Part shown: piece after piece, positions 8,071 through 34,542 of the stretch
Layout: the number at the start of each line of letters is the position of its first letter
Numbering within the stretch: the stretch's first letter is position 1
Assembly: GCF_039654945.1 (NCBI RefSeq)
Contig: NW_027361898.1
Span: 5,394,001 to 5,458,000, forward strand
Length of the DNA stretch: 64,000 nt
Source of the DNA: Dendrobates tinctorius
Taxonomy: Eukaryota
Direction: 5' to 3'
Made by a program: the position numbers and the translations under genes
Notes under the pieces: model-generated
Database searches by the model: none
What the model saw: only the letters and a program-made list of their open reading frames with translations
What the model was told of the DNA's origin: nothing

Positions 8071-8241
8071 CCATGCCCATCGCTGAGGCTTGTCCTCGCC
8101 TAGATATCCTATCAAGAATTTGCAGTGAAAAATGATGAGAGCAAAGATGTCGTCCACACGCTGCCAAGAATTAACGCAGATTGAGCTGCGGAGGTCTACT
8201 GATTTTTTTCACTGCAGATTTCTCTCAATGTAGTGCCTATA

Positions 8242-10694: not shown

Positions 10695-13600
10695 TCAGTG
10701 GTGGGGAAGGACCCTCTGAGGCAGGTGGATGGGGGCAGGTGGTAGGCGGAAGGTCACTCCTGAGTCTGCAATTAGGACGTGAACATCTTTTTGGAAAGTT
10801 CTGGATACAGATGGATTGCTCCTAAGAAACAAAATTTTTTTTTTTTTTTTTATTGAGGGTCTTGTGTGCTTGGCAACTTTTTGGCAGGTGCCAGTGGAGC
10901 TCATCTCTCCTACCTTGGGCCTCGCAGTGATTCCACTGATTTTGCTTCAGTGCTCTTCAGACCGCGGACAGATGACAGTTCTGAACGGAGATGAGACCAG
11001 GAATGACGTCTGCCGTCACTGTGACCTGGAGAGGAAAAGATGGAGTGATTCATAATAGGTCCCCTACTGATCTTGGTCGGGTGTGCACGAAGACTGTTAA
11101 TATGGGGTCTCAATGACAGCACCATAGTGGACGGAAAGGCAAAATGGTATCAGAATCCGCCAGTAGTGCAGCCTCAGGCCTATAACATTATGTGATCGGA
11201 CCTCCACAAAAGTTTGGCACACGGCGGGAAGAACTCCGGACATACACCTCCTGACCAACATATGGAAAACAATTTCTGCTGTGCGCACAGAACAAACATG
11301 ACGTCTCACCAACACCGCGTGATAAGAGGCTGCCTCTGCGCACCAGGCCCTTGGACACGTTGGATGGGTTGGATAAGGCTTCATCGGTAGGAGTCAAGGG
11401 ATATGTGGCAGAAAACTTGCACAGTTTTTTCTCTCCATTGGTTAAAGCGTCCGTGAAGTCCCAAGCATTGACTTTCAGGCTCCGATGTCTGTACCGCATG
11501 ATGGGATCTGCCGAGAATTGAAGCCAGAGAGACAACTATTAATTGAACCAATTTCGCTGAATATTTTGGACAGATTTTAGGGGGTTACGTGCGAAGGCCT
11601 CACCTCGCACCGCCTGCAGCGCTTTCTTCTGAGTGATGCATCTGTCTTTATCCGACACCCTGGAACAATCCTGGAACAGGCTGGAATAGGAAAAAAATAG
11701 CACTACTATTAGGACTATAACTCTCATCTGTGCATGCTGGGTGCTCGATGAAGCCCACTCCAGGGTCGCACACAGAGGAGTAGTCCCCCCTCCTGACCTT
11801 GGAGTGGATACACATTATATATGTCTGCTGCAAACCCACTTAGGTGGTGCGGGCCTGTCCTGGTGGTCCAGCCTGATCAGATCATTCTCTGTCTTGGCCC
11901 TGCTGCTCAGTAAATATTCGGACTCCAGGCTACAGAGAGATGCAATAGGCGTCAGTCTAATCCCAAACGCGCTTTGTGGCTTTTTGGTGTCGGCTGTGGT
12001 GTTTTGCACTGGGGTGATATCTGTGGTCTTCGGCTTTGAAGGCTGCAAAACAATAAAAATTGTAACGGTGATGACCAAAATCCAGCAATGTCCACTTCCA
12101 AAATACGTGTGCATCCTGTCCGCGTTTTATTCCAGTCCTAAAATTGCAAATATCCGGTTCTAATCTACATATCCCCTTCTAGAAATGTACTTATTTTATA
12201 TAATAAAAGGTTTTCTCCTCCAATCACATCCAAAGCTGCATCCAAAACAGCTGAGCAAAGTTCCTTTGAAGTATGGCACAGCATTTTGTGAGATGTCATT
12301 GACCGCACCTCCCAGTCCACAGACTGTGTGACCATGTGAGCAGAATTTTGAGTGCAGCTCTGGATGTGACTGGAGTAAGTTTTCCGGCGTCTCTCACATA
12401 ATATTCAGATGACAGATGCGTGGTATAAATAATTACGACCTTACGTTGTACCTTTGGGCCGGCGATGGCAGCAGGATTCCTCTCTGACTTGTCGTAGCCG
12501 TTTTCTGTCTGTTCGAGGCTTTTTTGGTTCTCTTTTTTGATGTTTTTGCTCGATCGTCCCGGCGTTATATCGCTGGGTGAAGGGGGCTGGTCCAAGCAAA
12601 GGAAAAAAGGGCAAGAGATGGTAACCCCCTCTGTGCTTCCATATACCCGAATACGGCAGGCATCTACAGCTAGAACAACCCCTTTAAGGCTGAATTCTCC
12701 AGCACTTGTGCTGCAGATTATTGTCTCCCCAATACAAGCAGTACAATTCCACACTTTTACCTTGATCACAAGCGATTGAGCAGTGACGGGGCCGTCGTTG
12801 GGATCTGCCGTCCAGGATACATCTGAGTTTCTCCTAGACAGAGCGGAGAATACGTCAACCCCCAATAGTGTTATCCCCAGCGCTGCACCGTGATGGTCAC
12901 GTACCGTGTTCTGGTGGAGACGGCTTTGTTGTCTCGTTTGGTTCTGCTCGTCTGCTTGCTCGTCAGCGGCCGTACGCCCTGGCTTTTGGTGAGAGAGCTT
13001 CTCCTGGATGGTTTCTCGCTCTGATCGGTCGCCTCTGCAGGAGAAGAACCGGATATGTGGCGAGAGCCCCCCGTTTGGTTTCTATCCAGAAAAAAATATC
13101 ACATCAGATCAGGTCTATTCCTTGCTAAATCTGCCTCTACGGTCACTAAGAAAGCTGCATCTGGCATTAATGTTTTTTTTTTTTTATGTCTTTGTCATGT
13201 TGTGTTTAGTTACTTTATTTTACCTTTGCACTAGAGATAAATGGAACCATCAACAAGTGTGGAAGGACCGAGTATGTGCTCTCTTTTGCAGGTAAGATTT
13301 ATTTATTACTAAATGTGCAGCCATGATTCTGGGGTAGATTCTAATTGTAAGGGTGTGTGGACTCATGACGGGCCTCATTAAGGCGACAAGGGCACATGGA
13401 TTGGCCATGTGGTTGGCGCGCTGTGACAGACAACACAGGAAGATTGTATACAATTTCTTGTACTTAGTAAACTTTCCTAAAACGTCTTTGTTAAAAATCC
13501 TGCTTGCTGATGGTTTCCAGAGCATAATTGATTTTTTGATTTTTATTTTTGCAGGAAACCAGTAAACGCAGCCTGACGTGGAGTGCGGCCCTGTAATAAC

Positions 13601-16600
13601 GTCCATCTGGTACAATCGGGATCATTTTCACAGTCCGAGCCAGATGACGGATTAATCCTCGCCTGCTTTATGGATGGAGGCTTATTCTTAAAGTGGATGT
13701 GAGGGGATTATACGCAATCAGATTTCTTATTGGAAACCACTGCTGGGATTAATGCTAATTGATATGAGAATATGGGGGGGGGGGGGGGGGGATGTGACCA
13801 GGCATTAACCACTTAATGATGGGCTACTATTTTTCTTCTAGTTACGGTTTTGCATTTTCAGCTTTGCGTCCTTTCTTAGGTCCCCACTAGTGTTACCGGG
13901 AGGGAAGGGAAACAATGAATGGGTTAAACGGCAGGGATTGGAAGTTCCACTGATCTCGGCTGCCCCATAGAGCCGAGCACCTGCTCCAGGCGGGCAGGAG
14001 GGGACACCCATGCAGGGATTATTCCAGCAGCATGGTAAAAACAGGGTGCTGTGTAATAAGGTGCCTAAAGGGGTATTCCCAAGGTAGAATGCTATTGTGA
14101 ATGGTCCGACCACAGGGACCCCCTGCAATCCCAAGAACAAGACTCTGAAATGCCCCAATGTAATGGAGTGGTGTTTCATTCATTGCCGTAGAGAGCGGAG
14201 TAAAGCGCTCTTTTTTTTTTTTTTTTCCCCCCCCCCCCCCCCCCCGAGCGTCCCATAGACAACGTGCAAAGAGATTTGCAGCAGACGTGGCCACCCCTTC
14301 ATTCAGATGTGGCATTTCAGAGCCCACCAATCAGCAAATTATCACCTACCCTTTAATGACTGCCATATCAAGGGTTATTGCCAGTCAGGGGACACTGGGT
14401 CTAAAACAAATGTTCTCAAACTTTTTACTCGACTTGCTGTGGGTGAATGGAGAGTTCTGTGGTTTCTTTTCTGTCCATCTAGAGACTGAACATCTTGATT
14501 ATGTCGCTGACATAGCTGTGGAGCCGAGTGTATGAGCCGTGTATGGATCTTACCGGGGGCGGTGGATCGCTACGTACTTGTTTAGGTTGGTGTACTCATC
14601 CCTGGCAGTCCTCTTGGTGACGGGGCGGCTCTCGTGGCGGCCTTCGCTGGTGATGGCGCATACAGTGCAGGTGTACTCAGTGCTGGGTGTCAGGCGCCGG
14701 GCGGTGTACGAGCGCTCCGTCCCTAGATACACAGACTTCCCGTTCAGGCTCAGTTCGTAATTGAAAAACCTGCCAACGGGGTCCTTGGGCCCCTCCCAGG
14801 TGATGAACATTTCACTGCGCCCGACGACGTAGACCGTGAGTCTGTCCGGAGCGTGGTCTCCTCCGTCCATTGTCCGGGTGACCACGGTGACTCTTGGACT
14901 GTTCCCCCTAGAGTTGCAGGAACATACGCTGAAAGTGTACGCGGTGGCGGGGGTCAGGCTGGTCACAATGCAGGTCACATCAGAGGTGGTCTCCACAAGG
15001 AGGTCCTCTCTATACACCACATATTTAATCCCTGGGCCAGAGCCGGCTGGCGGGTTCCAGGATAGCCTCACTCTTGTGGCCGTGCGTCCCACGACTTGGA
15101 AATCTGTGGGGCATCCAGGCAGCGGCTCTTCCACTGTCACCAGGGTGAGGGGGCTGGCCGGACTACGGTCTCCTTCAGTTTCCAGGACAACTTTCAGAGG
15201 ATGGTGGCCAGGGGTGCAGCGAGGTATGACATATGAGAAGGAAGGTCCTCTGTAAAGGAGCCGGTCACCATCATACAGGCTGCAGACAGAAGGGGAACAT
15301 GTAAATTAGCTAAAGAGCAGGGTGTGGGGGACAGGACGGGGGGCTATTCTCTCCCACTTCATTGTTTATGAGCTCAGGAAACTGTAAAAGTTAGGCCCTG
15401 TGCACACGGTGCGGATTCTGCTGCGGACCTGCAGCAGAACTGCAGGTGATGTACAGTACCATTAAAGACTATGAAAAAAAACCCGCTGTGCACATGCTGC
15501 GTTTTTTTCCGCACGGTTTTCGTGCGGAAAAAAAAAGCAGCATGTGACTTCTTTTGTGCGGTTTTCCTGCAGTTTTCCACCTACTCCACTATAGGAATCT
15601 GCAGGTGGAAAACCGCAAGATAACTGCAAAAAAACAGGAAGAAATACACAGGAAAAATGCAAGTCATTTGACCTGCGGATTTCGTGAATTCTGCACAGAA
15701 AATGCAAGCACAGAATACGCACCGTGTGCACATAGCCTTATACTTTCTAATGTTGGAATATACTCAAGTCACACCCAAAGCTACATTCAAACTGAATATC
15801 GAAGCTACAGGCAAATTTAAAGATCTGGGCAGCAGCTGCCCTTACCAAATCTGCAACAGAGGTGTATCTAGGGGGGCAGCCCACGCAGTATGCAGGCTGG
15901 CGAAGTCGGGCTGCCTAATGCGGAGGTCCAAAGTGTCTCCCCTGGCGGCTGCATTTTGGTGCCTCCATAACTGGCAGTCGGCCGTTTCCTGAGCCGGCTC
16001 AGAGAAGCTGCAGCGGGCCGGCTCTCGGTGATCAATTGTACTCGCTTCTTTTACCTCTGGGTCAGAACGACATCAGCAGCATGATCAGGTCATGTGATCA
16101 CGCTGCTGACATCACTCACCGGCACACATTGGTGGTAATTGCTCCACACTAGTGGAGCTGAAGACATCGAAGATTGAATGTAAAGGGAGGAGGGGAAGGT
16201 GATTTAGTGTGGGGGTATTTACTGTACTGTGGATTGTGTAGGGGTATTTACCATGTGTATGGGGGTATTTACTGTATTGTGGATTGTGTGTGGGTGCTTA
16301 CCGTGTGGGGTAGATTTAGTGTAATAGGACTAGTGGAGATTTACTGTGTATGGGGGTATTTACTCTGTATGGGGGTAATTACTGTATAACGAGGCTGGGG
16401 GAGATTTACTGTGTATGGGGAGATTTACTGTGTGGGAGATTTAGTGTAACGGAGCTGGAGGAGACTTACTGTTTGTGTGTATGGGGAATTTAAAATAATG
16501 GGGGGATGATTTGAGGACACATGTTTGGGGAGCAAGGAAGGGACTGGTGCAGACACAATATGGGGAGCGGGAGAAATTTTAAGACAATATGGGGGCATGT

Positions 16601-19600
16601 ATGAGGAATGGGTGCAGACAGTATGAGGAGCAAGAGGAAAATGTATGTGGACACAGTATGGGGAGCGAGGGGGGTGGGATGGCTGCGGACACAGTATGGG
16701 GAGTCGTGTGGATGAATGAGGAGGCAGTGTGGAGAGGAGACTATTGAGGGGAATTTGGCGAGGAGACAGTATGGGAGAAAAAACTGTGAGTGGGCACAGA
16801 ATAAAGATTGAGTAGTTTGGGGGGGGGGGGGGGGGGGAGTAGCATGGAGGAACAGTGTAAGGTCACAGCCAGGAAGAGACAGTAAGCTAAGGAGGGGGAG
16901 TGTGGTGAGGGGGGCATAGTATGGAGACTGGGTAGTATAAGGGGAACACAGTGTGAGAGGACTGTGTGATGTGGGGGGCCCAGTATGGAAAGGAGATTGC
17001 ATGTACCATAAGAGGGACAGTATGGGGGTCATATTATGTGCAGGGAATATAATGAGGAGCGATTATTTATTCAGGGGCTCAGTTTAGGGCAAATATTTTT
17101 GTTCAGGAGCATTATAATGACACTGCTATCTTTTAGGACATTGTGTGGTGATGTGCTGCGCAAGACCGGAGAAGATGGAAGTCTGCAAAGACGAATTGTG
17201 GCCGTGAAAAGTCATCTTTGCATCTGGACAAGATGATGAAGAAAAGAAAGCGAACAACATCATGTATATGGTACCTAGATGTAAATGTTTTTTTGTGTGA
17301 TATTAATTCACATTTTTTTTTATGTTGGGAGCATTAAAGGGGACTTCTGCAGACTTCTGTATTCTAACAGCAGGCGCACTGCTGTGCTGTCAGGATTCTC
17401 TCGTGTCGGCGATTTACATATATGCGGTCATATGCTGACTAGACGCGTGGCCTCACTCAATGAAAATGAATTGAGCAAGGCCAGACACGTCTTGACAGAA
17501 GATGACCAAAAGTATACAAATCACATACTTGTGCAAGGGAGAATCCTAAAAGTGTGCAGTGCATGCGCCTTGAGTATTCAGAAGCCTGCAGCCACCTATA
17601 GTTACTGCAGGCTTTCACCTCAAACCTGGATGCACCCTTTAATTATAAAATAAAGCCCTGTAGCCAACCCTAATAGCGTGTGATATACTCACTGTCAGGA
17701 TTCAGCTCTGCTTGCAGGTTCCAGCAGACATCACATGTACACTTCAGTTATATGTGACTTTCATACTTGCAGCTACCTGACAACGATCTTCTCTTCCTAA
17801 TTCTCTCAGTTTTTCACTGAACATCAAGAGAATTAGGAAGAGCAGCTCGTCAGTGTGTAAATCGCATATGTGCTTGGGGGAGCCGGGGCGCCAAATTGAA
17901 TTCTTGCCCTGGGCGCCAGAAAACCTCTGGTCTGCAGTGGGTCTGGACTCTGTATCTTGGTTTTAACCCATGACTGTCCACAATGTGAAAAAAACGGGAA
18001 ATGTGAATGCAGCTTTGGATGTGATTGGAGCATAACGTTTCAAGATAAGAAAAGCAAAATGTTTCCAATGTTTCTCAAGATGTAGCACTAATGAGTTTCT
18101 TGCTGACCTGTAAGTAACGGTCAGGCAGCTGTGGGGTCTATATTCCTTCCAGGCCACCACAACGGAGCCGGACTCCAGGATCTTTGCTGTAGGAGGCCCA
18201 GGCTGGGGGAGACGCTGGAGGTTCCTTAATGTGACCTCCACCTCTTGTAGCAGCTCCTCTCCGGCCACATGCAATGCTGCAATTTTCTATTGGAGATAAG
18301 AAAATAAAACAGATGGAAGTAACATAAATGTGAGATGTGTGAATGAACATTAACCTGCTGAAAGGGCAGAAGGAGGACCATATAATGTTAGGTAGATGGT
18401 GCGTGGCATATCCACATGATGCCCCATCACAATGCATACTGGGAACACACCACAAGACCCGCCGTGTACCGGGATCACCCCGCAAGGCCTGACGTGTAAC
18501 AAAACCACCCGACAAGACCCGCTGTGTACCATGAACACCACGTAAGATCCGCTGTGTACCTGGATCATCCGGCAAGACCCGCCGTGTATCGGGAACACCC
18601 TGCAAGACCTGATGTGTAACAAAATCAACCCCCAAGACCCTCTATGTACCACGAACACCATGTAAGACCCACGGTGTACTGGAATCACCCCGCAAGACCC
18701 ATTGTGTACCGGATTCATCCCACAAGACCTGGTATGTACAGAAATCACCCCGCAAGACCCGCCTTGTACCGGGATCATTCCGGAAGACCCACTGTGTACC
18801 GGATTCACCCCACAAAACCTGCTATGTACCGGGATCACCCCGCAAGGCCTGACGTGTAACAAAACCACCCGACAAGACCCGCTGTTTACCATGAACACCA
18901 CGTAAGATCCGCTGTGTACCTGGATATTCCGGCAAGACCCGCCGTGTACCGGGAACACCCTGCAAGACCTGATGTGTAACAAAATCAACCCCCAAGACCC
19001 TCTATGTACCACGAACACCATGTAAGACCCACGGTGTACCGGAATCACCCCGCAAGACCCATTGTGTACCGGATTCATCCCAAAAGACCTGCTATGTACA
19101 GAAATCACCCCGCAAGACCCGCCTTGTACCGGGATCACCCCGCAATACCCGCTGTGTACAGTGGGTGTGGAAAGTATTCAGACCCCTTTAAGTTTTTCAC
19201 TTTTTGTTTTATTGCAGCCATTTCGTAAATTTAAAAAAGTTCATTTTTTTCTCATTAATGTACACTCTGCACCCCATCTTGACTGAAAAAAAAAAGTAGA
19301 TTTTTTTGCAAATTTATTAAAAAAGAAAAACTGAAATCACATGGTCATAAGTATTCAGACCCTTTGCTCAGTATTGAGTAGAAGCACCCTTATGAGCTGG
19401 TACAGCCATGAGTCTTCTTGGGAATGATGCAACAAGTTTTTCACACCTGGATTTGGGGATCCTCTGCCATTTTTCCTTGCAGATCCTCTCCAGTTCCGTC
19501 AGGTTGGATGGTGAACGTTAGTGGACAGCCATTTTCAGGTCTCTCCAGAGATGCTCAATTGGGTTTAGGTCAGGGCTCTGGCTGGGCCAGTCAAGAATGG

Positions 19601-22600
19601 TCACAGAGTTGTTCTGAAGCCACTCCTTTGTTATTTTAGCTGTGTGCTTAGGGTCATTGTCTTGTTGGAAGGTGAACCTTCAGCCAAGTATGAGGTTCAG
19701 AGCACTCTGGAAGAGATTTTCATCCATGATATCTCTGTACTTGGCCGCATTCATGTTTCCTTCAATTACAATCAGTAGTCCTGTCCCAGCAGCTGAAAAA
19801 CAACCCCATAGCATGATGCTGCCACCACCATGTTTCACTGTTGGGATTATATTGGGCAGGTGATGAGCAGTGCCTGGTTTTCTCCACACATACTGCTTAG
19901 AATTATCATCAAAAAGTTCTATCTTCGTCTCATCAGACTAGCGAATCTAATTTCTCATAGTCTGGGAGTCCTTCATATGTTTTTAAGCAAACTCTATGTG
20001 GGGTTTCATATGTCTTGCAGAGGAGAGGCTTCCATTGGGCCACTCTGCCATAAAGGCCCGACTGGTGGAGGGCTCCAGAGACTTTGTGGAACTTTCTCCC
20101 ATTTCCCTACTGCATCTGTGGAGCTAAGCCACAGTGATCTTGGAGTTCTTCTTGTGGACATGTGGACCCCAAGACCCCCATACTGCCTCGCTGCCGATTT
20201 ATTAGGCATATGCAAAATTTTTACTATAGTTACAAAATCCTCCTTGAAATAACCAAGGTACGATGTGTGCAGGATTCATCCTCGGCATTATCAGCGGCCT
20301 TCTGCGTCCTCCGACAATATTATTGTCTTTTCTCCTGAAATATCCATGACAATGGTCTCCATGGTAACTAGTTCACCATTAAACCCATTGCTGACAGCAC
20401 CATTACCAGTAAAGTATTTATGGGGGGGTTTCCATAGAGATGACAGATACAGAGACTCTCCGGAGAGACAGTAGTGAGAGGGGGCAGGGGCATCGGTCTC
20501 TGTCAGATGTGCTAGATTAATGGTGAGACCTCGTTAGTTCCCATATGACATAATGAAGATCTCAGGATGTGGTCTTGCACTTTTTTCCATTGCCATGATC
20601 TCCACTACACCCATATTTCTCAACCCTAAATGTGCGTCTGGATGTTGGGGCTCAGTCTGGCGTCAAAGTATTCCGGCACCACACACTGGAAACCTTCAGA
20701 AAGCGCCAATTTACAGAAGGCTTCTGTGGTGTCCAGGAGCATCCTCCTCTACCCAGGAGCCTCCTGGAGATTCCCCAGGGAGCTGGCGAGTGTTGCAATA
20801 AATGGACAGGTGTGGTGCCGCCATGTTTCTCCGATCCCAGACATCCCCTAACCACAGGTCTGGGACACTTACTTTTAGGATCACTTCGAGCGTTGGGTGC
20901 TGTCGCAGTCTCACAACTCCTGAAGGAAACTTAGATAATCCCTTCACAGTTCTAGAAAGAAAAAGTTGTGTGTAAGCATCCTCACTAAGATGAGAATATG
21001 GCACTGATACCGAGGGTGCGCCATTGTAAATGTGGCACTGATACTGAGGGTGCGCTATTATAAAAAGTGGCATTGCAACCATCTAAGAATCCGATCTGAC
21101 GGAAACCTTAGAGGGTCAGCAATTATAAGTTTCAACATTTGCAGAATGGTGGTGTGACTTTGGCGGTAGCGCTGGTGCCAGGGCCATGTCTGGGAGTCAG
21201 TGTCTTTGTGAAGTGAAACTCGAGTGCCGTTGGCAAAACAAAGGGAAACTGAAGAACTTACATGGCAGCGAACCAGCAGGAGTCCTGCTCGCTGGACTGC
21301 AGGAGGTGGCAGAGTGTCTCCAAGACCTGTGGGAAGTGCGGGCTCTTCAGGACATGCTGGTGGCCGGCTGGGCTAGTCACAAGGCACGTAAGGGCAAAGC
21401 AAGCGTTTCTGCTTCCGCCAGCATCTCCTCCGGACATCATCGCCTCCAGCTTGCAAATCTAGACTTATCAGGGGAAGACATGATTTTACCTGAGGCGACA
21501 GCGGACAATCTACTCCTGAGGTGGCAGAGAGCATGCAGGCCTCCGGGAGTGGCGCCCTGACACTTTGGGGCCTGTTGGGAAGCAGCATCCTTCCACTCGG
21601 GAGCTGGTCGGGGAGCGGCGTCCTGACACTCGGGGGTCGGCTGGGGAGCGTCAAACTGACACTCGAGGGTCGGCCAGGGAGCGGCGCCCTTTCACTTGAG
21701 GGCCAATCGAAGTAAATGCAATTTTGGGGATATGTGCTTATTGCACTCACCATGTTGTCGGCCTCCTGCAGAGCCAGCACCCGTCTCCTGCCTTGGTCTG
21801 TGTCGCACAGACGTCCGAGTGTAAAAGCCGCATTCAGACCACAGCCTAAGAGAGAGGAGATGCATTAACCTGGAAGCCACTACAGATTGCCGACACAACG
21901 TGGTACCAGAGGTGGCCCAATGTGACAGCTTCAGCAAGTCCTACAGAAGTCTATGGAAATCATACAAGAGCCCAAGCAACAGAGTCACAGCATTTCCATT
22001 GTGTTCAGCAGACTCACAGTATTTCCATTATCTTCAGTATTATTTTGTGAGTATACAGTGCCACTAAGTTGGTATTTTGGGGCACAGCAGTGCCTCTGAT
22101 GTAGGTAGTATTAATGCTTGGACTCTTTCTTTTGTTTACCTGCCTCATCCACATGGAGGGATGTCATTATTTTCTGTAATATCATGTCAGATTTCGGATG
22201 TTCTAGGAGCCGTATGCACCCCTCCTGGCACATTGAGATGCGGGCAAGCACCAGGGCACAGTTGCTGGCCGTCCAGTCATTTGGAGAATCCAGGAGTTTT
22301 GTGATGTTCTCGATGATGAAATCGAAATCTACAGAGGAGAGGAGCCAATGTCTGCCATGGCTGTTCTCCGCCTGTAGGAAGAAATGTCAGCAGCTCAGTC
22401 ATCAATGTCCGATCTCCGTGCCACATCCACTACACGGCTAATGATTGGATCTGTATTCCCACACACATATGGAGGAAAGTCATCTAAGAAGCCGCAACAT
22501 ATCACTGACTGATCGGAGTTATCTGCCATACAATGCACCGGTAACCGGATCTTTCTGATGTGACATTGGCAAAACTACAACCTGCCAAAGTCACTGCAGC

Positions 22601-25600
22601 AAAGAGGCACTGGCGCTGTTCTACAGGGTGCCAGCTTAGAAACTGCAGAATAGTGAGTGCAGCTCTGGAGTATAATATAGGATGTAACTCAGGATCAGTA
22701 ATGTAATGTATGCACACAGTGACTGCACCAGCAGAATAGTGAGTGCAGCTCTGGAGTATAATACAGGATGTAACTCAGGATCAGCACAGGATAAGTAATG
22801 TATGTACACAATGACTGCACCAGCAGAATAGTGAGTGCAGCTCTGTGGTATAATACAGGATGTAACTCAGGATCAGTAATGTAATGTATGTACACAGTGA
22901 CTGCACCAGCAGAATAGTGAGTGCAGCTCTGGAGAATAATACAGGGTGTAACTCAGGATCAGTAATGTAATGTATGTACACTGTGATTGCACCAGCAGAA
23001 TAGTGAGTGCAGCTCTGGAGAATAATACAGGGTGTAACTCAGGATCAGTAATGTAATGTATGTACACTGTGATTGCACCAGCAGAATAGTGAGTGCAGCT
23101 CTGAAGAATAATACAGGGTGTAACTCAGGATCAGTAATATATTGTATGTACACAGTGACTGCACCAGCAGAATAGTGAGTGCAGCTCTGGAGTATAATAC
23201 AGAATATAACTCGGGATCAGTACAGGATAAGTAATACATTGTATGTACACTGTGACTCCACCAGCAGAATAGTGAGTGCAGCTCTGGAGTATATTACAGG
23301 ATGTAACTCAGGATCAGTACAGGATGCAATACAGTATATGTACACAGTGACTGCACCAGCAGAATAGTGAGTGCAGCTCTGGAGTATAATACAGGATGTA
23401 ACTCAGGATCAGTACAGGATAAGTAATGTAATGTATGTACATAGTGACTGCACCAGCAGAATAGTGAGTGCAGCTCTGGAGTATAATACAGGATGTAACT
23501 CAGGATCAGTACAGGATAAGTAATGTAATGTATGTACACAGTGACTGCACCAGCAGAATAGTGAGTGCAGCTCTGGAGTATATTAAAGGATGTAACTCAG
23601 GATCAGTACAGGATGCAATACATTATATGTACACAGTGACTGCACCAGCAGAATAGTGAGTGCAGCTCTGGAGTATAATACAGGAGGTAACTCAGGATCA
23701 GCACAGGATGTAATGTAATGTATGTACACAGTGACCAGACCAGCAGAATAGTGAGTGCAGCTCTGGAGTGTAATATCGGAAGCCCCATATATAATGATAC
23801 TTTATGGGCCCACACTTCTATGGCACAGTCTGGACACCCATTCTAAGCGGACCAGCTGATCTCTCACCAGTGTTCCCAGGGCACCAGCTGCATTCATTAC
23901 AGATTCTGCATCATCCCATAGCAGCATCGCTCCCAGTCCCCCCAGCAAGTCCCAGTCTGTCGCTATTCCTGCCAGGTTCACCAACATGACTGCAACTCCA
24001 GGATCTTCTGCCACCATGCCAAGAATGTAGGCAACATTACTGCAGAGGCTGCAACAACAGGAGTCATATAATATCAGAATCTCCAATACTAAATAGAAAT
24101 CCCATACAGTATGGTACAATGCCTGTATAATACTGCCAAACAGTGAGAACATAGCAGATCGTACACTGGAGCTGTTTCTGTGGTGGAATTTTGGGATGGA
24201 CACAGAGGTACTTGTGTGAATTGATCACTCAGCCCTGGGGTACCGGCATCACCCTCCTTATATCACCTCATTGTCAGTGCAGGGGTGCCAGTACTATTAG
24301 GGCATGTGGATGGCCTCTTTCACCTCTCCACGGCGCAGGGAGGAGAGACTCTTCGTAAACAACATGAAGCCAGCTCTGCTCGCCAGTTACTGGGGTAACA
24401 CTTTGTAAGCAAGCGGAGACGTGTGGAGCCAGGAATGGAAAGGTGCCAACAGATCTGAAAAGCACGAGGATTACACGCAGGCGGCCGCGGGGCTGGGCAT
24501 GTAAACAAGCAGACCAGGAGGATTTTCCAGCACAATCACTGGGAACGTAGAGAGAGCCCTCACTAATCTCTGACTAGTCACACAGGATAAGACTGAGACA
24601 GGGTAACCCTGATTATAATGAGGGTGCAAACTGCAAATCACCATCCCAGATGTTATACACCGGAGAGGGGGCGATGGGGCCGGTCGTTCTACACCGGAGA
24701 GGGGGCGATGGGGCCGGTCGTTCTACACCGGAGAGGGGGCGATGGGGCCGGTCGTTCTACACCGGAGAGGGGGCGATGGGGCCGGTCGTTCTACACCGGA
24801 GAGGGGGCGATGGGGCCGGTCGTTCTACACCGGAGAGGGGGCGATGGGGCCGGTCGTTCTACACCGGAGAGGGGGCGATGGGGCCGGTCGTTCTACACCG
24901 GAGAGGGGGCGATGGGGCCGGTCGTTCTACACCGGAGAGGGGGCGATGGGGCCGGTCGTTCTACACCGGAGAGGGGGCGATGGGGCCGGTCGTTCTACAC
25001 CGGAGAGGGGGCGATGGGGCCGGTCGTTCTACACCGGAGAGGGGGCGATGGGGCCGGTCGTTCTACACCGGAGAGGGGGCGATGGGGCCGGTCGTTCTAC
25101 ACCGGAGAGGGGGCGATGGGGCCGGTCGTTCTACACCGGAGAGGGGGCGATGGGGCCGGTCGTTCTACACCGGAGAGGGGGCGATGGGGCCGGTCGTTCT
25201 ACACCGGAGAGGGGGCGATGGGGCCGGTCGTTCTACACCGGAGAGGGGGCGATGGGGCCGGTCGTTCTACACCGGAGAGGGGGCGATGGGGCCGGTCGTT
25301 CTACACCGGAGAGGGGGCGATGGGGCCGGTCGTTCTACACCGGAGAGGGGGCGATGGGGCCGGTCGTTCTACACCGGAGAGGGGGCGATGGGGCCGGTCG
25401 TTCTACACCGGAGAGGGGGCGATGGGGCCGGTCGTTCTACACCGGAGAGGGGGCGATGGGGCCAGACGTTCTACACCGGAGAGGGGGCGATGGGGCCAGA
25501 CATTCTACACCGGAGAGGGGGCGATGGGGGTCGGACGTTATACACTAGGGAGTGATAAGAAAGATGGAGAAACTAGAGTTCGGATTTTCTTCCAATTTGC

Positions 25601-28600: not shown

Positions 28601-31600
28601 TAATCAGAACCTCCCACTCCCGTCTTCAAGACTATACACGTGCTGCGCCAATTCTTTGGAATGCACTTCCCAGGTCAATACGATTAGTCCCCAATCCCCA
28701 CAATTTTCAGCGTGCCCTGAAAACGCATTTATTCAGACTGGCCTATCGCCTCAACACATTAATCTAATCTATCCCTGTGTGGCACAGCCAAAAGTTTTTT
28801 ACCATAACCAGGTTCCCCGCATCATGTTCCCACATGCTTTATGCATCTATTAGCCCTCTGCATGACTGTTACACACTTAACATTATGGCTGGTCCAAACA
28901 ATCAGGGCAATTGTTACCACCCACCTTTCGTGTCTCCCCTTTTTTCCTCATAGATTGTAAGCTTGCGAGCAGGGCCCTCATTCCTCTTGGTATTTGTTAT
29001 GATCTATGTGATTATTGTTATGCTGTAATGTCTATTATCTGTACAAGTCCCCTCTGAAATGTAAAGTGCTGCGGAATATATCAGCGCTATAGAAATAACA
29101 TTTATTATTATTATTATTATGTGCTGGAAGGCAGCTGACTGACACTGAGCGATAGACAATTCTAGAAAAAGTCTAATAGTACTGTCCTGTTATGATCGCA
29201 CTATAGAAGGAGATCGCCTTCACTTATCCTGGCATGACCCAATGGTGTAGTATACAAGGGGGTGGTTATGCAAGAGGGCATTCTGGTAGGAAGATGTTAT
29301 CTCTTATTGTTCCCGCTCCACCCACTGGGAACCCCTCATTGATCTAAGAAACCCTGGACAGGTTACTCCAAAACTATAAATTTACTTTGGTCCAGCTCCA
29401 TACCACTCATTAATATCACTGTATGGTCCATTCATGTCAGCACCACATGGTGGTATTATTGGTGCACGTTATGTATGTTGGCATTACTAAGCTCCACCCT
29501 GTAATATATGGATTGAATAAAACTTACCGAATATTAGCGGTGTGCAGGAATCGACACAGGGCAGCCAGGTACTGATCACACTGAGGATCCTTTATTAAAG
29601 CCTCCACCAATTCTTCACATTGACTCTGAACTTCGCCCATCAACAGGGCGACGCATTCCTGCACCTCGTCTGGCAACGGGGAGAGGAGCCGGGGCAAGAG
29701 CCTGTCCATGACTAGTGTCTTAATCGCTAGCTCTTCTGTCACCATTAGGGGCCTGCCAGAACAAGCAGACGATATGTTTGGATTTTAAAGAGTAACTCCA
29801 CTCAGAATATATAATCTCCCTGTTTTTTTCCATAATAAGGGGCGGCAACCTCATGTAAAATCATCTAGGTTGGTTATAGCTCTATAGACTTTGATGGGCA
29901 ATATATTATAAGTCGGAGGTTGAAACAGCTGGAGAACTTTGCCCACTTAAGGTGCCAGGTTCACATCTCATTGAAGACTTTCCCTCTTAGTTTCCATTGA
30001 CAGGGAAAAAAAGTACTGCAAGAAGTGCAATTTATTTCATGAAGATGGTGTTCTGCCATGGCAGAGCCAGATAGACCCCAATATGAGTCAGTGGAGTCTG
30101 ACAGGTGCTGCTGTTTTGCATAGAGCAAGGATCCGGCCCCGGGTTGCGATATCTGCGCAGAAAATCCACAGCGTAAAACAATACCAGCTAAGGAGATAAG
30201 GCTTCAATGCACATTGTGGACATTTTTTCCACGTAATTTGTGTGGTCCGGAATCATCCAATCCCCATGTTAAAAAAATAAACAATATATATATATATAAA
30301 AATATATATATTTGCAAATATGAACATTCAATTTCTGCATTGGTGTCAGTCTTGTGTGGAGAGATAATGAGGTGTGACAGCAGAAATTTAAGAAAATTTG
30401 GGGGGCATGTGGGCACCCCCATTATCCAGCACCTTTGGGGGCCCCCTCATCCAGCGCCTTTGGGCGCCCCCATTATCCAGCGCCTTTGGGTGCCCCCATC
30501 ATCCAGCACCTTTGGGCACCCCATCATCCAGCACCATTGGGGGCCCCCATTATCCAGCACCTTTGGGCACCCCCTCATCCAGCGTCTTTGGGCGCCCCCA
30601 TTATCCAGCACCTTTGGGGGGGGCATTATCCAGCACCTTTGGGCACTCCCATTATCCAGCGTCTTTGGGCACTCCCATTATCCAGCACCTTTGGGCACCC
30701 CCATTATCCAGCACCTCTGGGCACCCCCTCATCCAGCGTCTTTGGGCGCCCCCATTATCCAGCACCTTTGGGCACCCCCTCATCCAGCACCTTTGGGCAC
30801 CCCCATTATCCAGCACCTTTGGGCGCCCCCATTATCCAGCACCTTTGGGCGCCCCCATTATCCAGCACCTTTGGGCGCCCCCATTATCCAGCACCTTTGG
30901 GGGGGGGCATTATCCAGCACCTTTGGGCACTCCCATTATCCAGCACCTTTGGGCACCCCCATTATCCAGCACCTCTGGGCACCCCCTCATCCAGCGTCTT
31001 TGGGCGCCCCCATTATCCAGCACCTTTGGGCACCCCCTCATCCAGCACCTTTGGGCACCCCCATTATCCAGCACCTTTGTGCACCCCCATTATCCAGCAC
31101 CTCTGGGCACCCCCTCATCCAGCGTCTTTGGGCGCCCCCATTATCCAGCACCTTTGGGCACCCCCATTATCCAGCACCTTTGGGCGCCCCCTCATTAGTT
31201 GCAATTTTAGCAGTGAACTAAAATGTCGATGGGACAAATTTGCTGCCTACTCCTAGATAAACTGGGAGTGAGAATGGCAACTGTACGGGTTGTCAGCCAG
31301 CTTTCCTAGACTTCTGAATGGCAAACCTGCAAAATTAGGCAGGATAGCTGTTCAGTAATCTAGGAACGCTCAATGACAACCCTTAGAGGAGCAACAATGG
31401 AGATTATACTTGTTGTCAGAAATAAAAAATATAGAGATAAAGAAGCAAAAGATGAATCAGAGCAAAACAAGGAAGAATGGCCGTTCAGGAAGCTAGAAAA
31501 GCTCACTGACAACACTTATAGAAACAATAATGGAGGTCTAACTGGTTGTCACACAGCTTTCTCAGACTCCTGAATGGTACATTTACCTGCTACCGGTAGT

Positions 31601-32078
31601 TAAGAAATCAATTTCCTACAGGAACAGTTGGAGTCCTCACTACCATGCTATCATATATCTAAAGCAATACTTCCGAAATTCCCGTAATCTGACATTAATG
31701 GTAATAGATTACCAGATATTCCAGATTATGGGGGTAGAGGGATGTCTTTATTTTCTTCCTGGTTTTTCAGTTTGGTGAAATCCGCAATATGGCAGATTAG
31801 TAGAATTCCCTCTATTTGCCGTATAGCTGGGGCAGGTGTAATAAGCGGCACAGTATGGGCTGATGTGATGGGACTTCTTACCTGTGTCCTCCGTGCCCCC
31901 GGGCTGATGAGACGTTTTGTGGCTCTGCTGCACTTTTCCTTCCAAGATCAATGAGTTTTCCTTGAGCTTCTCCAATCAGCGGTGAGGACCGTCCTCCAGG
32001 AGGCAGGGAGCAGCCACCGGTTACTGCGTTCTCCACACACCCCAAATAGTGGGGCTGCCCTCCTCGTACCACCTCCAT
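10695..32078 (-). CDS. Uncharacterised protein of about 1062 aa: ARM/HEAT-like repeats, three fibronectin type III domains, Ser/Arg/Lys-rich tail
   Basis: 17 exons with AG/GT and continuous phase: 32078-31882, 29752-29528, 24048-23868, 22371-22140, 21845-21751, 21458-21262, 20951-20873, 18286-18108, 15279-14578, 13081-12905, 12833-12761, 12586-12452, 12042-11840, 11680-11604, 11507-11310, 11025-10914, 10821-10695 (3189 nt). ARM-like helix motifs [48 protein letters not shown]; FN3 motifs RLSWNPP...[11 protein letters not shown] and FITWEGP...[11 protein letters not shown]. First and tail exons are less certain than exons 2-9. Confidence 0.85.
15394..15737. mobile_element. MITE, PIF/Harbinger (Tourist)-like
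   Basis: TIRs GGCCCTGTGCACACGGTGCG / CGCACCGTGTGCACATAGCC, TTA duplication. Confidence 0.85.
17338..17638. mobile_element. TTAA-flanked hairpin MITE (T2/Kolobok-like)
   Basis: TTAA-AGGGG...ACCCT-TTAA ends with internal inverted symmetry. Confidence 0.65.
18437..19158. repeat. 30-bp minisatellite with a 360-bp higher-order duplication
   Basis: CAAGACCC...TGTACC units every 30 bp; the same variant unit occurs at 18481 and 18841. Confidence 0.9.
19159..20152 (-). mobile_element. Truncated Tc1 element (one TIR plus transposase C-terminal fragments)
   Basis: TA-CAGTGGGTGTGGAAAGTATTCAGACCC terminus; [16 protein letters not shown] on the minus strand. Confidence 0.88.
22645..23775. repeat. Tandem repeat, about 86-99 bp unit (CAGCAGAATAGTGAGTGCAGCTCTGGAGTATAATACAGGATGTAACTCAGGATCAG...)
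   Basis: About 12 direct copies with two length variants. Confidence 0.93.
24657..25530. repeat. 34-bp GC-rich near-perfect minisatellite, about 25 copies
   Basis: Unit ACACCGGAGAGGGGGCGATGGGGCCGGTCGTTCT. Confidence 0.97.
26070..29119 (+). mobile_element. L2-clade LINE, 5'-truncated, frameshifted ORF2 (APE fragment plus RT)
   Basis: [40 protein letters not shown] motifs; (TTA)n 3' tail. Confidence 0.93.
30410..31195. repeat. Minisatellite, about 23-25 bp (CCCCATTATCCAGCACCTTTGGGC)
   Basis: More than 30 direct copies. Confidence 0.93.
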
Positions 32079-33480
32079 CTACTACCACAGGTGTCAATCA
32101 TTATGGCTCCTAGACAGGTTGTCACCCAGCTTTCCCAGACTCCTGATTGACAAATATAAAAAAAAAGAGCAATACGCTTTAGGAAATTGTAAGATTGCTA
32201 AGTCGTGGTCTCATGAGAATCTAAAATCCGAACAGGCTGGATATTAACGCATCCACACTCACTATGCCCAGCTGCAAGTTTAGAAAATATTGCAGCAACA
32301 AAATTCTAATGCTAGGGATCTAGAAAAGCTGGGTGACCATCCTATGGGAAGAATATTACAATTTTATACCAGTTGTCATCCAGCTTTCCCAGACTCTTGC
32401 CTAGTTATACAGAGATATAACACCAAGGGATGCATCAGAGCAAAACTAGGCAGGATAGCCATGCTGGCTGGAATCTAGGAAAGCTCACTGACAACCCTAA
32501 TGGGAGCAATAATGGATTATACTGGTTTTCAGCCAGCTTTCCCAGACTCCTGAATGGTAAACCTGTCTAATTAAACAGTGGGACAGAAAAAAAAGAGATA
32601 TATCAGAGCAATACTAAGCAGGATAGCCATGCTGGGAATATAGGAAAGCTCAATGACAACCCTTATGGGAGCAATAACAAATTATACTGGTTGTCAGCCA
32701 GCTTTCCTAGTCTCCCGAATGGTAAGCCTGTCTTGTTAAACAGTGGTACAGCAAAAAAAGATATATCAGAACAAAACTAAGGAGGATAGCCATGCTAGAA
32801 TCTAAGGCTGAGTGCACACATACATTTTTGCCCTGCGGATTTTTCCGCGCAGAATTGAAGAAATCCGCAGGTTTTTGTGCGGTTTCCCCCCTGCGGATTT
32901 GGAGAATGGAGCAGGTGGAAAACCGCACAAAAGAAGTAACATGCTGCGGATTTTGCACCGCAGGAAAACCGCGCGGAAAAATCTGCAGCGTCTGCACAGC
33001 GGTTTTTTTCATTGATTTTAAGGCTACTGTACATCACAATGCGGATATGCAACGTTTCTGCTCGGTAAAATCCGCTGCAAATCTGCATCGTGTGCACACA
33101 GCCTAAGAAAGCTCAATGACAACCCTTATGGGAGCAAAATTTGAAGTTATTCTAGTTGTCAGACAGCTTTTCCAGACTCCTGAATGACAAACCTGCTAAG
33201 GTACAGGAAAAATATAAATATGAGCTATTATCAGAGCAAAACTAGGCAGGATACCCTCTCCAAAAATCCAGGAAATCTCAATTACACTAATGGTGGTTAT
33301 TCTGGTTGTCAGACAGCTTTTCTAGACTCCTGAATGGTAAACCTATCTAGTTTAGAGATATAAAAGCAAGGAAACTAGGCAGGATAGCTGTGCAGGAATC
33401 CAGGAAAGCTCAATAACATCCTTCTGGTATCAATTATGGTGGCTGTACTAGTTGTCACCCAGCTTTCCCAGATTCCTGAA
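31285..33480. repeat. Degenerate tandem array of hairpin-forming units surrounding the first coding exon of the ARM-FN3 gene
   Basis: Recurrent GGTTGTCAGCCAGCTTTCC(C/T)AGA paired with inverted TAGGAAAGCT...TGACAACC. Confidence 0.75.
32806..33103. mobile_element. MITE, PIF/Harbinger-like, related to 15394-15737
   Basis: GGCTGAGTGCACAC / GTGTGCACACAGCC termini, TAA duplication, shared internal GCAGGTGGAAAACCGCA. Confidence 0.85.
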
Positions 33481-33599
33481 TGTGACATCCGCCTACTCAT
33501 AGGGAAAAAATGTGTAATTTTACTACAGAACATGAGGGGGATAAGCATGGATGTGATATGGCGTTTAGCAGGCATCGCGCCCCTGTCCTACTAATTACA

Positions 33600-34506: not shown

Positions 34507-34542
<36 letters not shown>

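What the first reader, a model, noticed from the sequence alone, without database searches (positions are those of the whole stretch)
10695..32078. Hidden 17-exon gene for an ARM-repeat plus triple-FN3 intracellular protein
Seen: the ORF track shows only fragments, but 17 exons join in frame through canonical splice sites into about 1062 aa with at least five N-x-x-x-x-L-G/A helix motifs about 45 aa apart, three FN3 domains and a roughly 370-aa basic, Ser-rich tail; no signal peptide or obvious transmembrane segment. Knowledge: this Asn spacing is typical of armadillo repeats; I do not recognise a named mammalian gene with this architecture or one at this position beside PAXX. Inference: an uncharacterised scaffold, possibly lost in mammals.
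Basis: partly seen in the sequence, partly recalled or inferred. Interest (0 to 1): 0.85.

Follow-up and report, generated by a model that had tools for sequence, protein, structure and literature searches.

The report
Unnamed armadillo-plus-FN3 scaffold gene in a frog
This is a real, expressed, selectively constrained frog gene for a cytoplasmic protein made of armadillo repeats, three fibronectin-III domains and a long disordered tail; it belongs to an ancient animal gene family (corals to crocodiles) that databases list only as "uncharacterized" and that has no visible counterpart in mammals, birds or lizards.

Summary
On the minus strand, 16 coding exons (29745 to 10695), all flanked by GT-AG, join into an uninterrupted 998-codon frame. 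A 17th, upstream exon (32078-31882) is probably 5'UTR.

RNA-derived contigs from three studies carry the exact joints 15279/18108 and 18286/20873. One 2731-nt contig links armadillo (ARM) exon 6 to FN3 exons 7 and 8 with no mismatch.

AlphaFold2 gives a canonical seven-to-eight-repeat ARM solenoid (pLDDT 94; Vac8 Z 31) and three FN3 sandwiches. The remaining ~375 residues form a disordered, basic, Ser-rich tail. No signal peptide or membrane segment was found.

dN/dS against Ranitomeya imitator is 0.22 (ARM 0.10). Synteny there is PAXX | gene | COQ4 | EDF1.

Orthologues occur as apparently one gene per species from cnidarians through molluscs, echinoderms, amphioxus, sharks, sturgeon, a moray eel (a teleost), amphibians, turtles and crocodilians. 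All are labelled "uncharacterized LOC" or mislabelled "usherin". None was seen from mammals, birds or squamates, and no paper was found.

Function is inferred, not shown: a phospho-regulated cytoplasmic adaptor. Interest is moderate.

The parts
31882..32078 (-). It is probably 5'UTR. The ORF from ATG 32078 joins exon 1 in frame and would add 68 aa.
   Evidence: It corresponds to the 72-aa N-terminal extension of the Ranitomeya model P0184, and the donor CACAG|GTAAGA is conserved. Against Ranitomeya there is a 32-bp indel that is not a multiple of 3. The Ranitomeya ATG reads GTG here. The 43 shared codons differ by about 5 nonsynonymous and 1 synonymous changes (my hand count) plus a 3-nt indel. 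All other frogs and all distant orthologues start at the MVTEEL-equivalent position. Transcription of this exon in this species was not tested.
29528..29752 (-). Exon 1. The acceptor is CAG|GCCCC at 29752 and the conserved start codon is at 29745. Encodes aa 1-73 (N-terminal cap helices of the ARM domain).
23868..24048 (-). Exon 2, aa 73-133 (ARM; Asn77 and Asn125)
22140..22371 (-). Exon 3, aa 134-211 (ARM; W166-x-x-x-N170, R177)
21751..21845 (-). Exon 4, aa 211-242 (ARM; N215, R222)
21262..21458 (-). Exon 5, aa 243-308 (ARM; N260, W304)
20873..20951 (-). Exon 6, aa 308-334 (last ARM repeat)
   Evidence: The RNA contig joint 18286->20873 appears in runs X15, X16 and X19.
18108..18286 (-). Exon 7, aa 335-394: the final ARM helix, the linker and the first strands of FN3-1
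   Evidence: Joints on both sides are seen in RNA contigs.
14578..15279 (-). Exon 8, aa 394-628: the rest of FN3-1, then FN3-2 and FN3-3
   Evidence: Pfam fn3 E 9e-25. AF2 strands at 367-617. The joint 15279->18108 is present in all four runs.
12905..13081 (-). Exon 9, aa 628-687: start of the disordered tail (SRRSSL)
12761..12833 (-). Exon 10, aa 687-711. Carries the R-R-N-S-D-V-S-W motif, which is conserved across most of the family.
   Evidence: The 3' border is the least certain by score, but it matches the Ranitomeya exon in length (73 nt) and has AG/GT flanks.
12440..12586 (-). Exon 11, aa 712-760 (tail). An alternative in-frame donor lies at 12452.
11840..12042 (-). Exon 12, aa 761-828 (tail)
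11604..11680 (-). Exon 13, aa 828-854 (tail)
11310..11507 (-). Exon 14, aa 854-920 (tail; VRRGSL)
10914..11025 (-). Exon 15, aa 920-957 (tail; GRRHSWSHL)
10695..10821 (-). Exon 16, aa 957-998 plus the stop codon (10695-10697)

Best explanation
Window 10695-32078 (minus strand) holds one intact, transcribed, protein-coding gene. It has 16 coding exons and one upstream exon that is probably untranslated.

Its product of 998 aa (994 with the alternative exon-11 donor) has three parts:
- an N-terminal armadillo-repeat solenoid (about aa 1-356: a two-helix cap plus about seven three-helix repeats);
- three tandem FN3 beta-sandwiches (about aa 365-620), predicted with high confidence through the linker, which suggests but does not show a rigid attachment to the solenoid;
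- a tail of about 375 residues that is intrinsically disordered, basic, Ser/Thr-rich and enriched in R-[RK]-x-S/T sites.

There is no signal peptide or membrane segment, so the protein is cytoplasmic or nuclear. It is the dendrobatid-frog orthologue of an ancient family found in cnidarians and bilaterians, apparently one gene per species, which is catalogued but unnamed and unstudied. That much is shown here.

The following is inferred, at roughly even odds. The protein is an adaptor or scaffold. The strongly conserved H3-helix face of the ARM groove carries Asn at -7, a hydrophobic or aromatic residue at -4, and invariant Arg177 and Arg222 at the canonical Asn position. This face would bind an extended, probably acidic or phosphorylated peptide. 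The FN3 triplet would act as a rigid spacer or second docking surface. The tail would carry short linear motifs, including the conserved R-[RP]-x-S-x-x-S, switched by basophilic kinases.
For: Gene model.

Transcription and splicing: the joints 15279/18108 (4 runs) and 18286/20873 (3 runs) have CT..AC ends, which read GT..AG on the minus strand. A 2731-nt contig covers exons 8, 7 and 6 with 0 mismatches. The runs come from 3 studies.

Selection: dN/dS against Ranitomeya is 0.22 overall (dS 0.158). It is 0.10 for ARM, 0.19 for FN3 and 0.34 for the tail.

Orthology: 91.5% identity to Ranitomeya and 90% to Phyllobates. The loci are colinear and flanked by PAXX and COQ4. The gene tree of 70 orthologues largely mirrors the species tree.

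ARM fold:
- AF2 gives pLDDT 94 and pTM 0.90.
- A PDB profile search hits a designed ARM protein at 2e-9 and beta-catenin at 6e-8.
- Foldseek gives TM 0.72-0.76 to designed ARM proteins.
- VIA gives Vac8 Z 31, importin-alpha Z 26.9 and p120 Z 26.8.
- The Atlas search returns Vac8, ARMC3 and RSPH14.

FN3 domains and disordered tail.

No membrane segment or signal peptide.

Groove conservation: the invariant columns lie mostly in the H3 helices (N125, A127, G128, N170, L173, R177, F218, R222, N260, W304).

Tail motifs: R-[RP]-x-S-x-x-S is present in most sequences from corals to frogs. R[RK]x[ST] sites number 193 observed against 83 expected over 71 tails, and 5 against 1.2 in this protein.
Against: No experiment or expression atlas bears on function, and the tissues of the RNA runs are hidden.

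AF2 places no tail segment in the ARM groove; the whole tail has pLDDT below 50. There is therefore no support for a tail-groove interaction.

The groove reading rests on sequence register alone. No coordinates or electrostatics were examined.

Pfam Arm and HEAT hits are below the gathering threshold.

The motif enrichment counts related sequences, which are not independent.

Alignment in the disordered tail is unreliable outside the few motifs.
Confidence: 0.85

Rival explanations
1. Translation would start in the upstream exon (ATG 32078), giving about 1066 aa with a 68-aa N-terminal extension.
For: The ORF from 32078 is open through the exon-0 donor and joins exon 1 in frame. The Ranitomeya annotation predicts a 72-aa extension from the homologous exon. 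By my own arithmetic, not a tool run, an open 65-codon frame has only about a 4% chance under uniform codon usage.
Against: A 32-bp frame-shifting indel separates the two species upstream of 'CSLPPGG'. The Ranitomeya start codon reads GTG here. By my hand reading of the alignment, an upstream ATG opens a short out-of-frame uORF. The 43 shared codons show about 5 nonsynonymous against 1 synonymous change plus an indel. Phyllobates, Rhinoderma, Bufo, Hyla, Xenopus, turtles, sturgeon and all invertebrate orthologues begin at the MVTEEL-equivalent helix.
Confidence: 0.2
2. It is a secreted or membrane-bound usherin-like or adhesion-type FN3 protein, as several automatic names suggest (Usherin, USH2A, Lar-like, NCAM).
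For: The FN3 pair gives its best scores to giant multi-FN3 proteins, and several database names say 'Usherin'.
Against: Neither this protein nor 17 orthologues has a signal peptide or membrane segment. The N-terminal 356 residues are an ARM solenoid, a fold of cytoplasmic and nuclear proteins. Pfam finds no laminin, EGF, Ig or phosphatase domains.
Confidence: 0.03
3. It is a decaying or lineage-specifically inactivated gene (pseudogene) whose exons merely remain recognisable.
For: The family has apparently been lost in several vertebrate lineages. The introns are full of transposons and minisatellites.
Against: The 998-codon frame is intact and all 30 internal splice sites are canonical. dN/dS is 0.22, and 0.10 in the ARM part. 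Correctly spliced transcripts appear in runs from three studies.
Confidence: 0.02
4. It has a characterised, named orthologue (for instance a mammalian ARMC- or FNDC-type gene) that these searches missed.
For: The word-index search scores only the 8000 best candidates and lists 120. The representative library has no names. The literature library lacks most subscription journals.
Against: The ARM-only profile search finds nothing except fragments of this same family. The ESM Atlas returns only its own 'uncharacterized' cluster. Every family-like hit in the exhaustive HMMER list falls in a non-mammalian lineage. No paper mentions any of 24 locus tags or accessions, or the architecture.
Confidence: 0.06

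Closest known systems
RefSeq/GenBank predicted orthologues, e.g. Ranitomeya imitator 1060-aa 'uncharacterized protein' (P0184), Phyllobates terribilis (P0183), Xenopus tropicalis LOC100485040, Crassostrea gigas LOC105334930 ('Usherin' K1RSU6)
   Same: Same gene. Identity is 91.5% and 90% to the two dendrobatids. The 16 coding exon lengths match except for two 9-nt differences, and the neighbours are the same (PAXX, COQ4)..
   Different: Nothing of substance. The Ranitomeya model starts in the upstream exon and uses the exon-11 donor 12 nt earlier. None of these entries has a name, a function or a paper.
Canonical armadillo-repeat proteins: Vac8, importin-alpha (Kap60), beta-catenin/plakoglobin, p120/plakophilin, and designed consensus ARM proteins
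   Same: Same fold: a right-handed superhelix of about 42-45-residue three-helix repeats. Vac8 Z 31 (304 aligned residues, rmsd 2.8). Designed ARM proteins Z 29-30. Kap60 Z 26.9. Beta-catenin profile E 6e-8.. As in those proteins, conservation is concentrated on H3, which lines the ligand groove there.
   Different: Only 12-18% identity. There is no IBB domain, no W-x-x-x-N array (only one, at W166/N170), and no catenin N- or C-terminal regulatory regions. The canonical H3 Asn is replaced by T, R, R, C and T, and the family's invariant Asn lies 7 residues earlier. Fusion to three FN3 domains is not a feature of any of these families.
Axonemal ARM proteins (SPAG6/PF16, RSPH14/RSP14, ARMC3)
   Same: High structural scores for the ARM domain (Z 27.6-28.5; Atlas TM 0.68-0.81).
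   Different: The scores are no better than for the generic ARM proteins. These proteins have no FN3 domains. The family is absent from mammals, which have cilia, so it is not a core ciliary component.
Intracellular alpha-solenoid + FN3 proteins such as ANKFN1 and FANK1 (from my own knowledge, not tested here)
   Same: The design principle is shared: a helical repeat module joined to FN3 in a protein without a signal peptide.
   Different: Those proteins use ankyrin repeats, not ARM, and have one FN3 domain. No sequence relationship was found or tested.

Membership tests
Armadillo-repeat superfamily | Tandem three-helix repeats of about 42 residues forming a right-handed superhelix | tested here: met
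   AF2 gives pLDDT 94 with 21 helices in an H1-H2-H3 rhythm. Foldseek TM 0.72-0.76. VIA Z 31 to Vac8 and 27-30 to other ARM proteins.
Armadillo-repeat superfamily | Significant sequence-profile match to ARM repeats | tested here: met
   The family profile against PDB sequences hits designed ARM OR497 at 2e-9 and beta-catenin at 6e-8. Pfam PF00514 scores only 15-18 bits against a cut-off of 20.6 for single orthologues, which is sub-threshold there.
Peptide-binding ARM proteins of the importin-alpha type | Ladder of canonical H3 Asn residues with Trp four residues before (W-x-x-x-N), plus an N-terminal IBB domain | tested here: not met
   In the HMM alignment to consensus ARM, the family's Asn aligns with the position 7 residues before the canonical Asn. 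The canonical position holds T132, R177, R222 and C267. Only one W-x-x-x-N is present (W166/N170). There is no IBB domain.
Fibronectin type III domain (PF00041) | Pfam score above the gathering threshold and a seven-strand beta-sandwich | tested here: met
   87 bits against 25, with 2 stretches in exon 8. Invertebrate orthologues have 3 stretches. AF2 shows three sandwiches at 365-620 with pLDDT 85-98.
Usherin (USH2A), as named by some sources | Signal peptide, laminin-type and EGF-Lam domains, a long FN3 array, a membrane segment | tested here: not met
   No such Pfam domains. No signal peptide or membrane segment. Only three FN3 domains.
Orthologous group of the 'uncharacterized LOC' ARM-FN3 proteins (Cnidaria + Bilateria) | Full-length colinear similarity, the same domain order, conserved neighbours, and a gene tree that follows the species tree | tested here: met
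   Identity is 91.5% to Ranitomeya and 31-41% to invertebrates over the whole length. Synteny is PAXX | gene | COQ4. In a moray eel and a second, unidentified assembly it is ZMYND19 | gene | TMEM141. For the tree.

The most novel reading that the evidence does not exclude
The family is an ancestral cnidarian-bilaterian signalling adaptor. Its ARM groove, with its Asn/Arg code, would read a phosphorylated or acidic linear motif, possibly in its own RRxS-rich tail. That would be an importin-alpha/IBB-like auto-inhibition run by basophilic kinases. Independent loss in mammals, birds, squamates, ecdysozoans and tunicates would then mark the disappearance of a whole, still unknown pathway that can be studied in Xenopus.
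Probability: 0.15. Interest if true: 0.65.

Novelty: new variant of a known kind. Interest (0 to 1): 0.4.

Why it matters
Both folds are ordinary, but I found the combination (ARM solenoid + three FN3 + a long phospho-tail in a cytoplasmic protein) described in no paper and assigned to no named family. Yet it has been kept, apparently as one gene per species, at 30-40% identity since before cnidarians and bilaterians split, and it is under clear purifying selection in frogs.

It is one of the conserved animal genes that human-centred biology cannot see, because mammals appear to lack it. Xenopus, axolotl, sturgeon, oysters, sea urchins and corals all have it, so function is directly testable by knock-out and interaction proteomics.

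The practical value here is a checked gene model with RNA-confirmed junctions, a corrected start codon, a defined conserved groove and tail motifs for mutagenesis, and a corrected distribution (present in a teleost). It is a good lead, not a surprise. Related genomes already predict the gene, and no mechanism is demonstrated.

Tried and rejected
- Pfam on single ARM exons gave nothing. The ARM nature emerged only from the family profile and AF2.
- A word-index search with the FN3 exon alone returned three short Logan fragments because of the length filter.
- The exhaustive HMMER search with the FN3 pair is swamped by giant multi-FN3 proteins. Family members had to be picked out by hit position (about residues 435-640) and a count of 1-2 matched stretches.
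- An ARM-only profile search for a shorter mammalian paralogue found only fragments of the same family.
- The ESM Atlas returned only the protein's own cluster.
- Six literature searches, by architecture and by 24 locus tags or accessions, found nothing on the family. One further call failed on term length.
- 'Lost in teleosts' was my working reading, and I rejected it. Five unlabelled representatives form the sister clade of bowfin. One of them lies in GCA_029692085.1, which PMC12492003 identifies as the giant moray Gymnothorax javanicus.
- Tail-in-groove auto-inhibition has no support from AF2, since the whole tail has pLDDT below 50.
- A ciliary role, suggested by the SPAG6 and RSPH14 structural hits, was rejected as non-specific.
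- The scan's own notebook had nothing on this gene.
- P0071 could not be located on any contig.
Full report
**What is there**

The window is vertebrate DNA without N runs. Mechanical ORF lists show only fragments between 10.7 and 32.1 kb. The largest minus-strand open segment (15305-14553) scores as two Pfam fn3 domains, at 87 bits against a cut-off of 25.

An exhaustive HMMER search with that exon found many giant multi-FN3 proteins. It also found a set of proteins of 600-1300 aa that match once, at about residues 435-640. The best of these, from the frog Rhinoderma darwinii (82% identical over the exon), is an 'uncharacterized protein LOC142659041' of 1004-1005 aa.

**Gene model**

I ran tblastn of that orthologue on the window. 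I then enumerated all GT/GC donors and AG acceptors around each hit, scored against the orthologue. This gives 16 coding exons on the minus strand:

| Exon | Coordinates |
|---|---|
| 1 | 29745-29528 |
| 2 | 24048-23868 |
| 3 | 22371-22140 |
| 4 | 21845-21751 |
| 5 | 21458-21262 |
| 6 | 20951-20873 |
| 7 | 18286-18108 |
| 8 | 15279-14578 |
| 9 | 13081-12905 |
| 10 | 12833-12761 |
| 11 | 12586-12440 |
| 12 | 12042-11840 |
| 13 | 11680-11604 |
| 14 | 11507-11310 |
| 15 | 11025-10914 |
| 16 | 10821-10695 |

All borders are AG...GT. The joined CDS is 2997 nt, or 998 codons, with no internal stop. One border is ambiguous. Exon 11 can end at 12440 or at an equally good in-frame donor at 12452, the one used in the Ranitomeya annotation, a difference of 4 aa.

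**The seventeenth exon**

In the window, the ORF from ATG 32078 runs through a conserved donor (CACAG|GTAAGA) and joins exon 1 in frame at the acceptor CAG|GCCCC (29752). This would add 68 residues, for 1066 aa in total.

The two dendrobatid sequences differ there by a 32-bp indel, so they would use different frames and different ATGs upstream of it. The Ranitomeya ATG reads GTG in the window. By my hand count, the 43 shared codons carry about five nonsynonymous changes, one synonymous change and a 3-nt indel. Every other orthologue, including Phyllobates, starts at the MVTEEL-equivalent helix. I therefore read exon 0 as 5'UTR and 29745 as the start, and I leave about a 20% chance that the extension is translated. 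Whether exon 0 is transcribed in this species was not tested.

**Transcription and splicing**

Exon 8 is fully held by six small contig sets of 'organism A' and partly by others. I laid four runs from three studies on 15001-21000. The contigs jump exactly from 15279 to 18108 (all four runs) and from 18286 to 20873 (three runs). The skipped ends are CT..AC, which reads GT..AG on the minus strand.

One 2731-nt contig covers exon 8, exon 7 and exon 6 without a single mismatch and continues on both sides. The intron bins between these exons have no such bridging pieces. The only deep signal there is a multicopy Tc1-like fragment at 19.2-20.2 kb. In addition, Logan contigs of 3.8-4.5 kb from other amphibians and a lungfish-like species encode complete 999-1035-aa orthologues. 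Contigs that short can only be mRNA.

**Selection and orthology**

The closest proteins are from Ranitomeya imitator (91.5%) and Phyllobates terribilis (90%), so the window comes from a dendrobatid frog.

The Ranitomeya locus reads PAXX (-) | this gene (+) | COQ4 (-) | EDF1 (+). It is colinear with the window. The PAXX side corresponds to window coordinates above about 33.1 kb and the COQ4 side to about 8.2-3.0 kb. All 16 exons have counterparts of the same length, apart from two 9-nt differences, with AG/GT flanks.

| Region | dN/dS (Nei-Gojobori) |
|---|---|
| Whole CDS | 0.22 (dS 0.158, dN 0.035) |
| ARM part | 0.10 |
| FN3 part | 0.19 |
| Tail | 0.34 |

The gene is under purifying selection in this lineage, so the 'neutral evolution' refuter fails.

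**Architecture**

AlphaFold2 with 49 orthologues gives the first 345 residues at pLDDT 94 and pTM 0.90. The model is all-helical, with two long cap helices followed by about seven H1-H2-H3 repeats. Its nearest matches are:

- A profile of the region finds a designed consensus ARM protein (2e-9), beta-catenin (6e-8), plakoglobin and importin-alpha among PDB sequences.
- Foldseek gives TM 0.72-0.76 to designed ARM proteins.
- The Foldseek-independent search gives Vac8 Z 31.0, designed ARM 29-30, SPAG6-, RSPH14- and ARMC-type axonemal proteins 27.6-28.5, Kap60 26.9, p120 26.8, plakophilin 25.9 and beta-catenin 25.1.
- The ESM Atlas returns Vac8, ARMC3, RSPH14, PUB-ARM and ARMC8.

The full-length model (70 sequences) keeps the solenoid up to residue 356. 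It adds three beta-sandwiches at 365-620, with pLDDT mostly 85-98, running through the linker without a drop in confidence. Residues 623-1001 stay below pLDDT 50. Pfam finds three fn3 stretches in invertebrate members and nothing else.

The tail is 13.5% Ser with 63 K+R against 36 D+E. No 19-residue window exceeds a Kyte-Doolittle value of 1.7 in this protein or in 17 orthologues, and the N-termini are not signal-like. The protein is therefore intracellular and soluble.

**The Asn motifs**

N-x-x-x-x-L-[GA] occurs at residues 77, 125, 170 and 215, and N-x-x-x-x-L-T at 260. That is 4 matches against 0.31 expected, and 0 of 5000 shuffles reach 4. Asn 125, 170 and 260 are invariant and Asn 77 and 215 nearly so in 70 orthologues. 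The periodicity is that of ARM repeats.

In the HMM alignment to consensus ARM, however, the family Asn aligns with the residue seven positions before the canonical ARM Asn ('...K-E-A-A-R-A-L-A-N-I-A'). The canonical position is occupied by T132, R177, R222 and C267. Positions -7, -4 and 0 lie on one face of H3. From my knowledge of importin-alpha and designed ARM-peptide complexes, this is the ligand groove. In this family those positions hold:

- invariant Asn at -7;
- G128, L173, F218, F263 at -4;
- T, R, R, C at position 0, with R177 and R222 invariant.

The groove is thus the most conserved surface, but it has its own code. The two invariant Arg suggest an acidic or phosphorylated extended ligand. 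This is inference.

**The tail**

Most of the tail aligns poorly, but a few motifs persist.

- R-[RP]-x-S-x-x-S (RRNSDVSW here, aa 687-694) is present in most sequences from coral to frog.
- Invertebrates share F-x-Q-R-x-N-T-F-x-x-S-H-R-P and F-[IV]-P-[MT]-Q-x-R-T-Q-P-x-N-[LM]-P, which vertebrates have largely lost.
- R-[RK]-x-[ST] sites are 2.3 times more frequent than in composition-matched shuffles over 71 tails. This protein has 5 against 1.2 expected: RRSS, RRNS, RKPS, RRGS, RRHS. The sequences are related, so this is indicative only.

**Distribution**

The word-index search with the Rhinoderma protein gives 127 hits at E up to 1e-5, of which 120 are listed. The taxa are:

- about 30 frog genera, plus salamanders and caecilians;
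- turtles and crocodilians;
- lungfish and coelacanth;
- sharks, rays and a chimaera;
- bichir, sturgeon, paddlefish and bowfin;
- amphioxus, hemichordates and all echinoderm classes;
- molluscs, annelids, nemerteans, a brachiopod and bryozoans;
- corals.

Further hits are anthozoans and jellyfish. All are 'uncharacterized', 'hypothetical', or misnamed after FN3 similarity or a neighbouring gene: Usherin, USH2A, Lar-like, SAPC2, TMEM141.

A FastTree of the ARM+FN3 core largely reproduces the species tree, with one sequence per species sampled. This fits vertical descent of what appears to be a single gene per species.

No mammal, bird, squamate, arthropod, nematode, flatworm or tunicate appears in any search. 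Teleosts were also missing. However, five unlabelled representatives from the exhaustive search form the sister clade of bowfin. One of them lies on a chromosome of assembly GCA_029692085.1 between ZMYND19 and TMEM141. PMC12492003 names that assembly as the giant moray Gymnothorax javanicus. A second representative has the same neighbours in another assembly. The gene therefore survives in at least some teleosts. The absences in mammals, birds and squamates rest on protein databases only.

**Known or new**

Six literature searches, by architecture and by 24 locus tags or accessions from Xenopus, alligator, amphioxus, sea urchins, oysters, scallop, starfish, Lottia, Capitella, Saccoglossus, Callorhinchus and corals, found no paper on the family. 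The ESM Atlas has only its own 'uncharacterized' cluster of 326 members. The ARM-only profile finds no shorter paralogue.

The gene is therefore catalogued by annotation pipelines but uncharacterised. It fails the defining tests of importin-alpha, the catenins and usherin. I class it as a new variant (an undescribed architecture) of the ARM-repeat scaffold kind.

**Verdict**

There are four corrections: the start codon, the register of the Asn, 'hidden' (the gene is already predicted in related frogs), and the wider distribution that includes a teleost.

The mechanism, a cytoplasmic adaptor with a peptide-binding ARM groove, an FN3 spacer and a kinase-regulated disordered tail, is inferred at roughly even odds. 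Nothing here shows what it binds or where it acts. Interest is moderate (0.4).

Noticed in passing
window 26658-28767 (+), inside intron 1; a similar ORF at 51271-52041 (+): Fragment of a non-LTR retrotransposon. The ORF at 27415-28026 hits Pfam RVT_1 (E 6e-20). A near-identical C-terminal ORF recurs at 51271-52041.
   Followed up: partly
window 6437-7459 (+), 1392-2390 (+), 19371-19937 (-): Tc1/mariner elements. The ORF at 6437-7459 is an uninterrupted 340 aa with the Sleeping-Beauty-type HTH, HTH_Tnp_Tc3_2 and DDE_3 domains, so the transposase may be intact. The ORF at 1392-2390 is a second DDE_3 transposase. The remnant in intron 6 attracts very deep RNA contigs (word depth up to about 3000), presumably from many copies elsewhere in the genome.
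   Followed up: partly
window 24652-25545, 30410-31195, 22645-23775, 18442-19161: Four large minisatellites inside introns of the gene: 34 bp x 26 (98% matches), 26 bp x 30, 86/97 bp x 12, and 60/120/360 bp x 6-12. Most are also present in the Ranitomeya introns.
   Followed up: partly
window about 32024-32101 (-): In the 5' exon an upstream ATG (about 32101) opens a short ORF that ends at a TAA near 32024 and overlaps the ATG at 32078 in another frame. It may be a regulatory uORF. In Ranitomeya the same ATG is in frame with the annotated start. The positions come from my hand reading of the alignment.
   Followed up: partly
window about 3000-8241 (-) and 33100-37725 (+): By colinearity with the Ranitomeya locus, these stretches are the COQ4 side and the PAXX side. 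PAXX lies head-to-head with this gene, about 1 kb apart in Ranitomeya and roughly 1.7-2 kb here after insertion of a 165-bp tandem repeat at 32434-32796. This suggests a shared bidirectional promoter. Both flanks contain long tandem arrays (2595-4761 and 35254-36721).
   Followed up: partly
L002 (Gymnothorax javanicus) and L003: In the moray eel and in a second, unidentified assembly the orthologue lies between ZMYND19 and TMEM141. In dendrobatids it lies between PAXX and COQ4. From my own knowledge, most of these neighbours are human 9q34.3 genes (COQ4 is at 9q34.11), so the gene belongs to that ancient linkage block, and the block has been rearranged around it.
   Followed up: no
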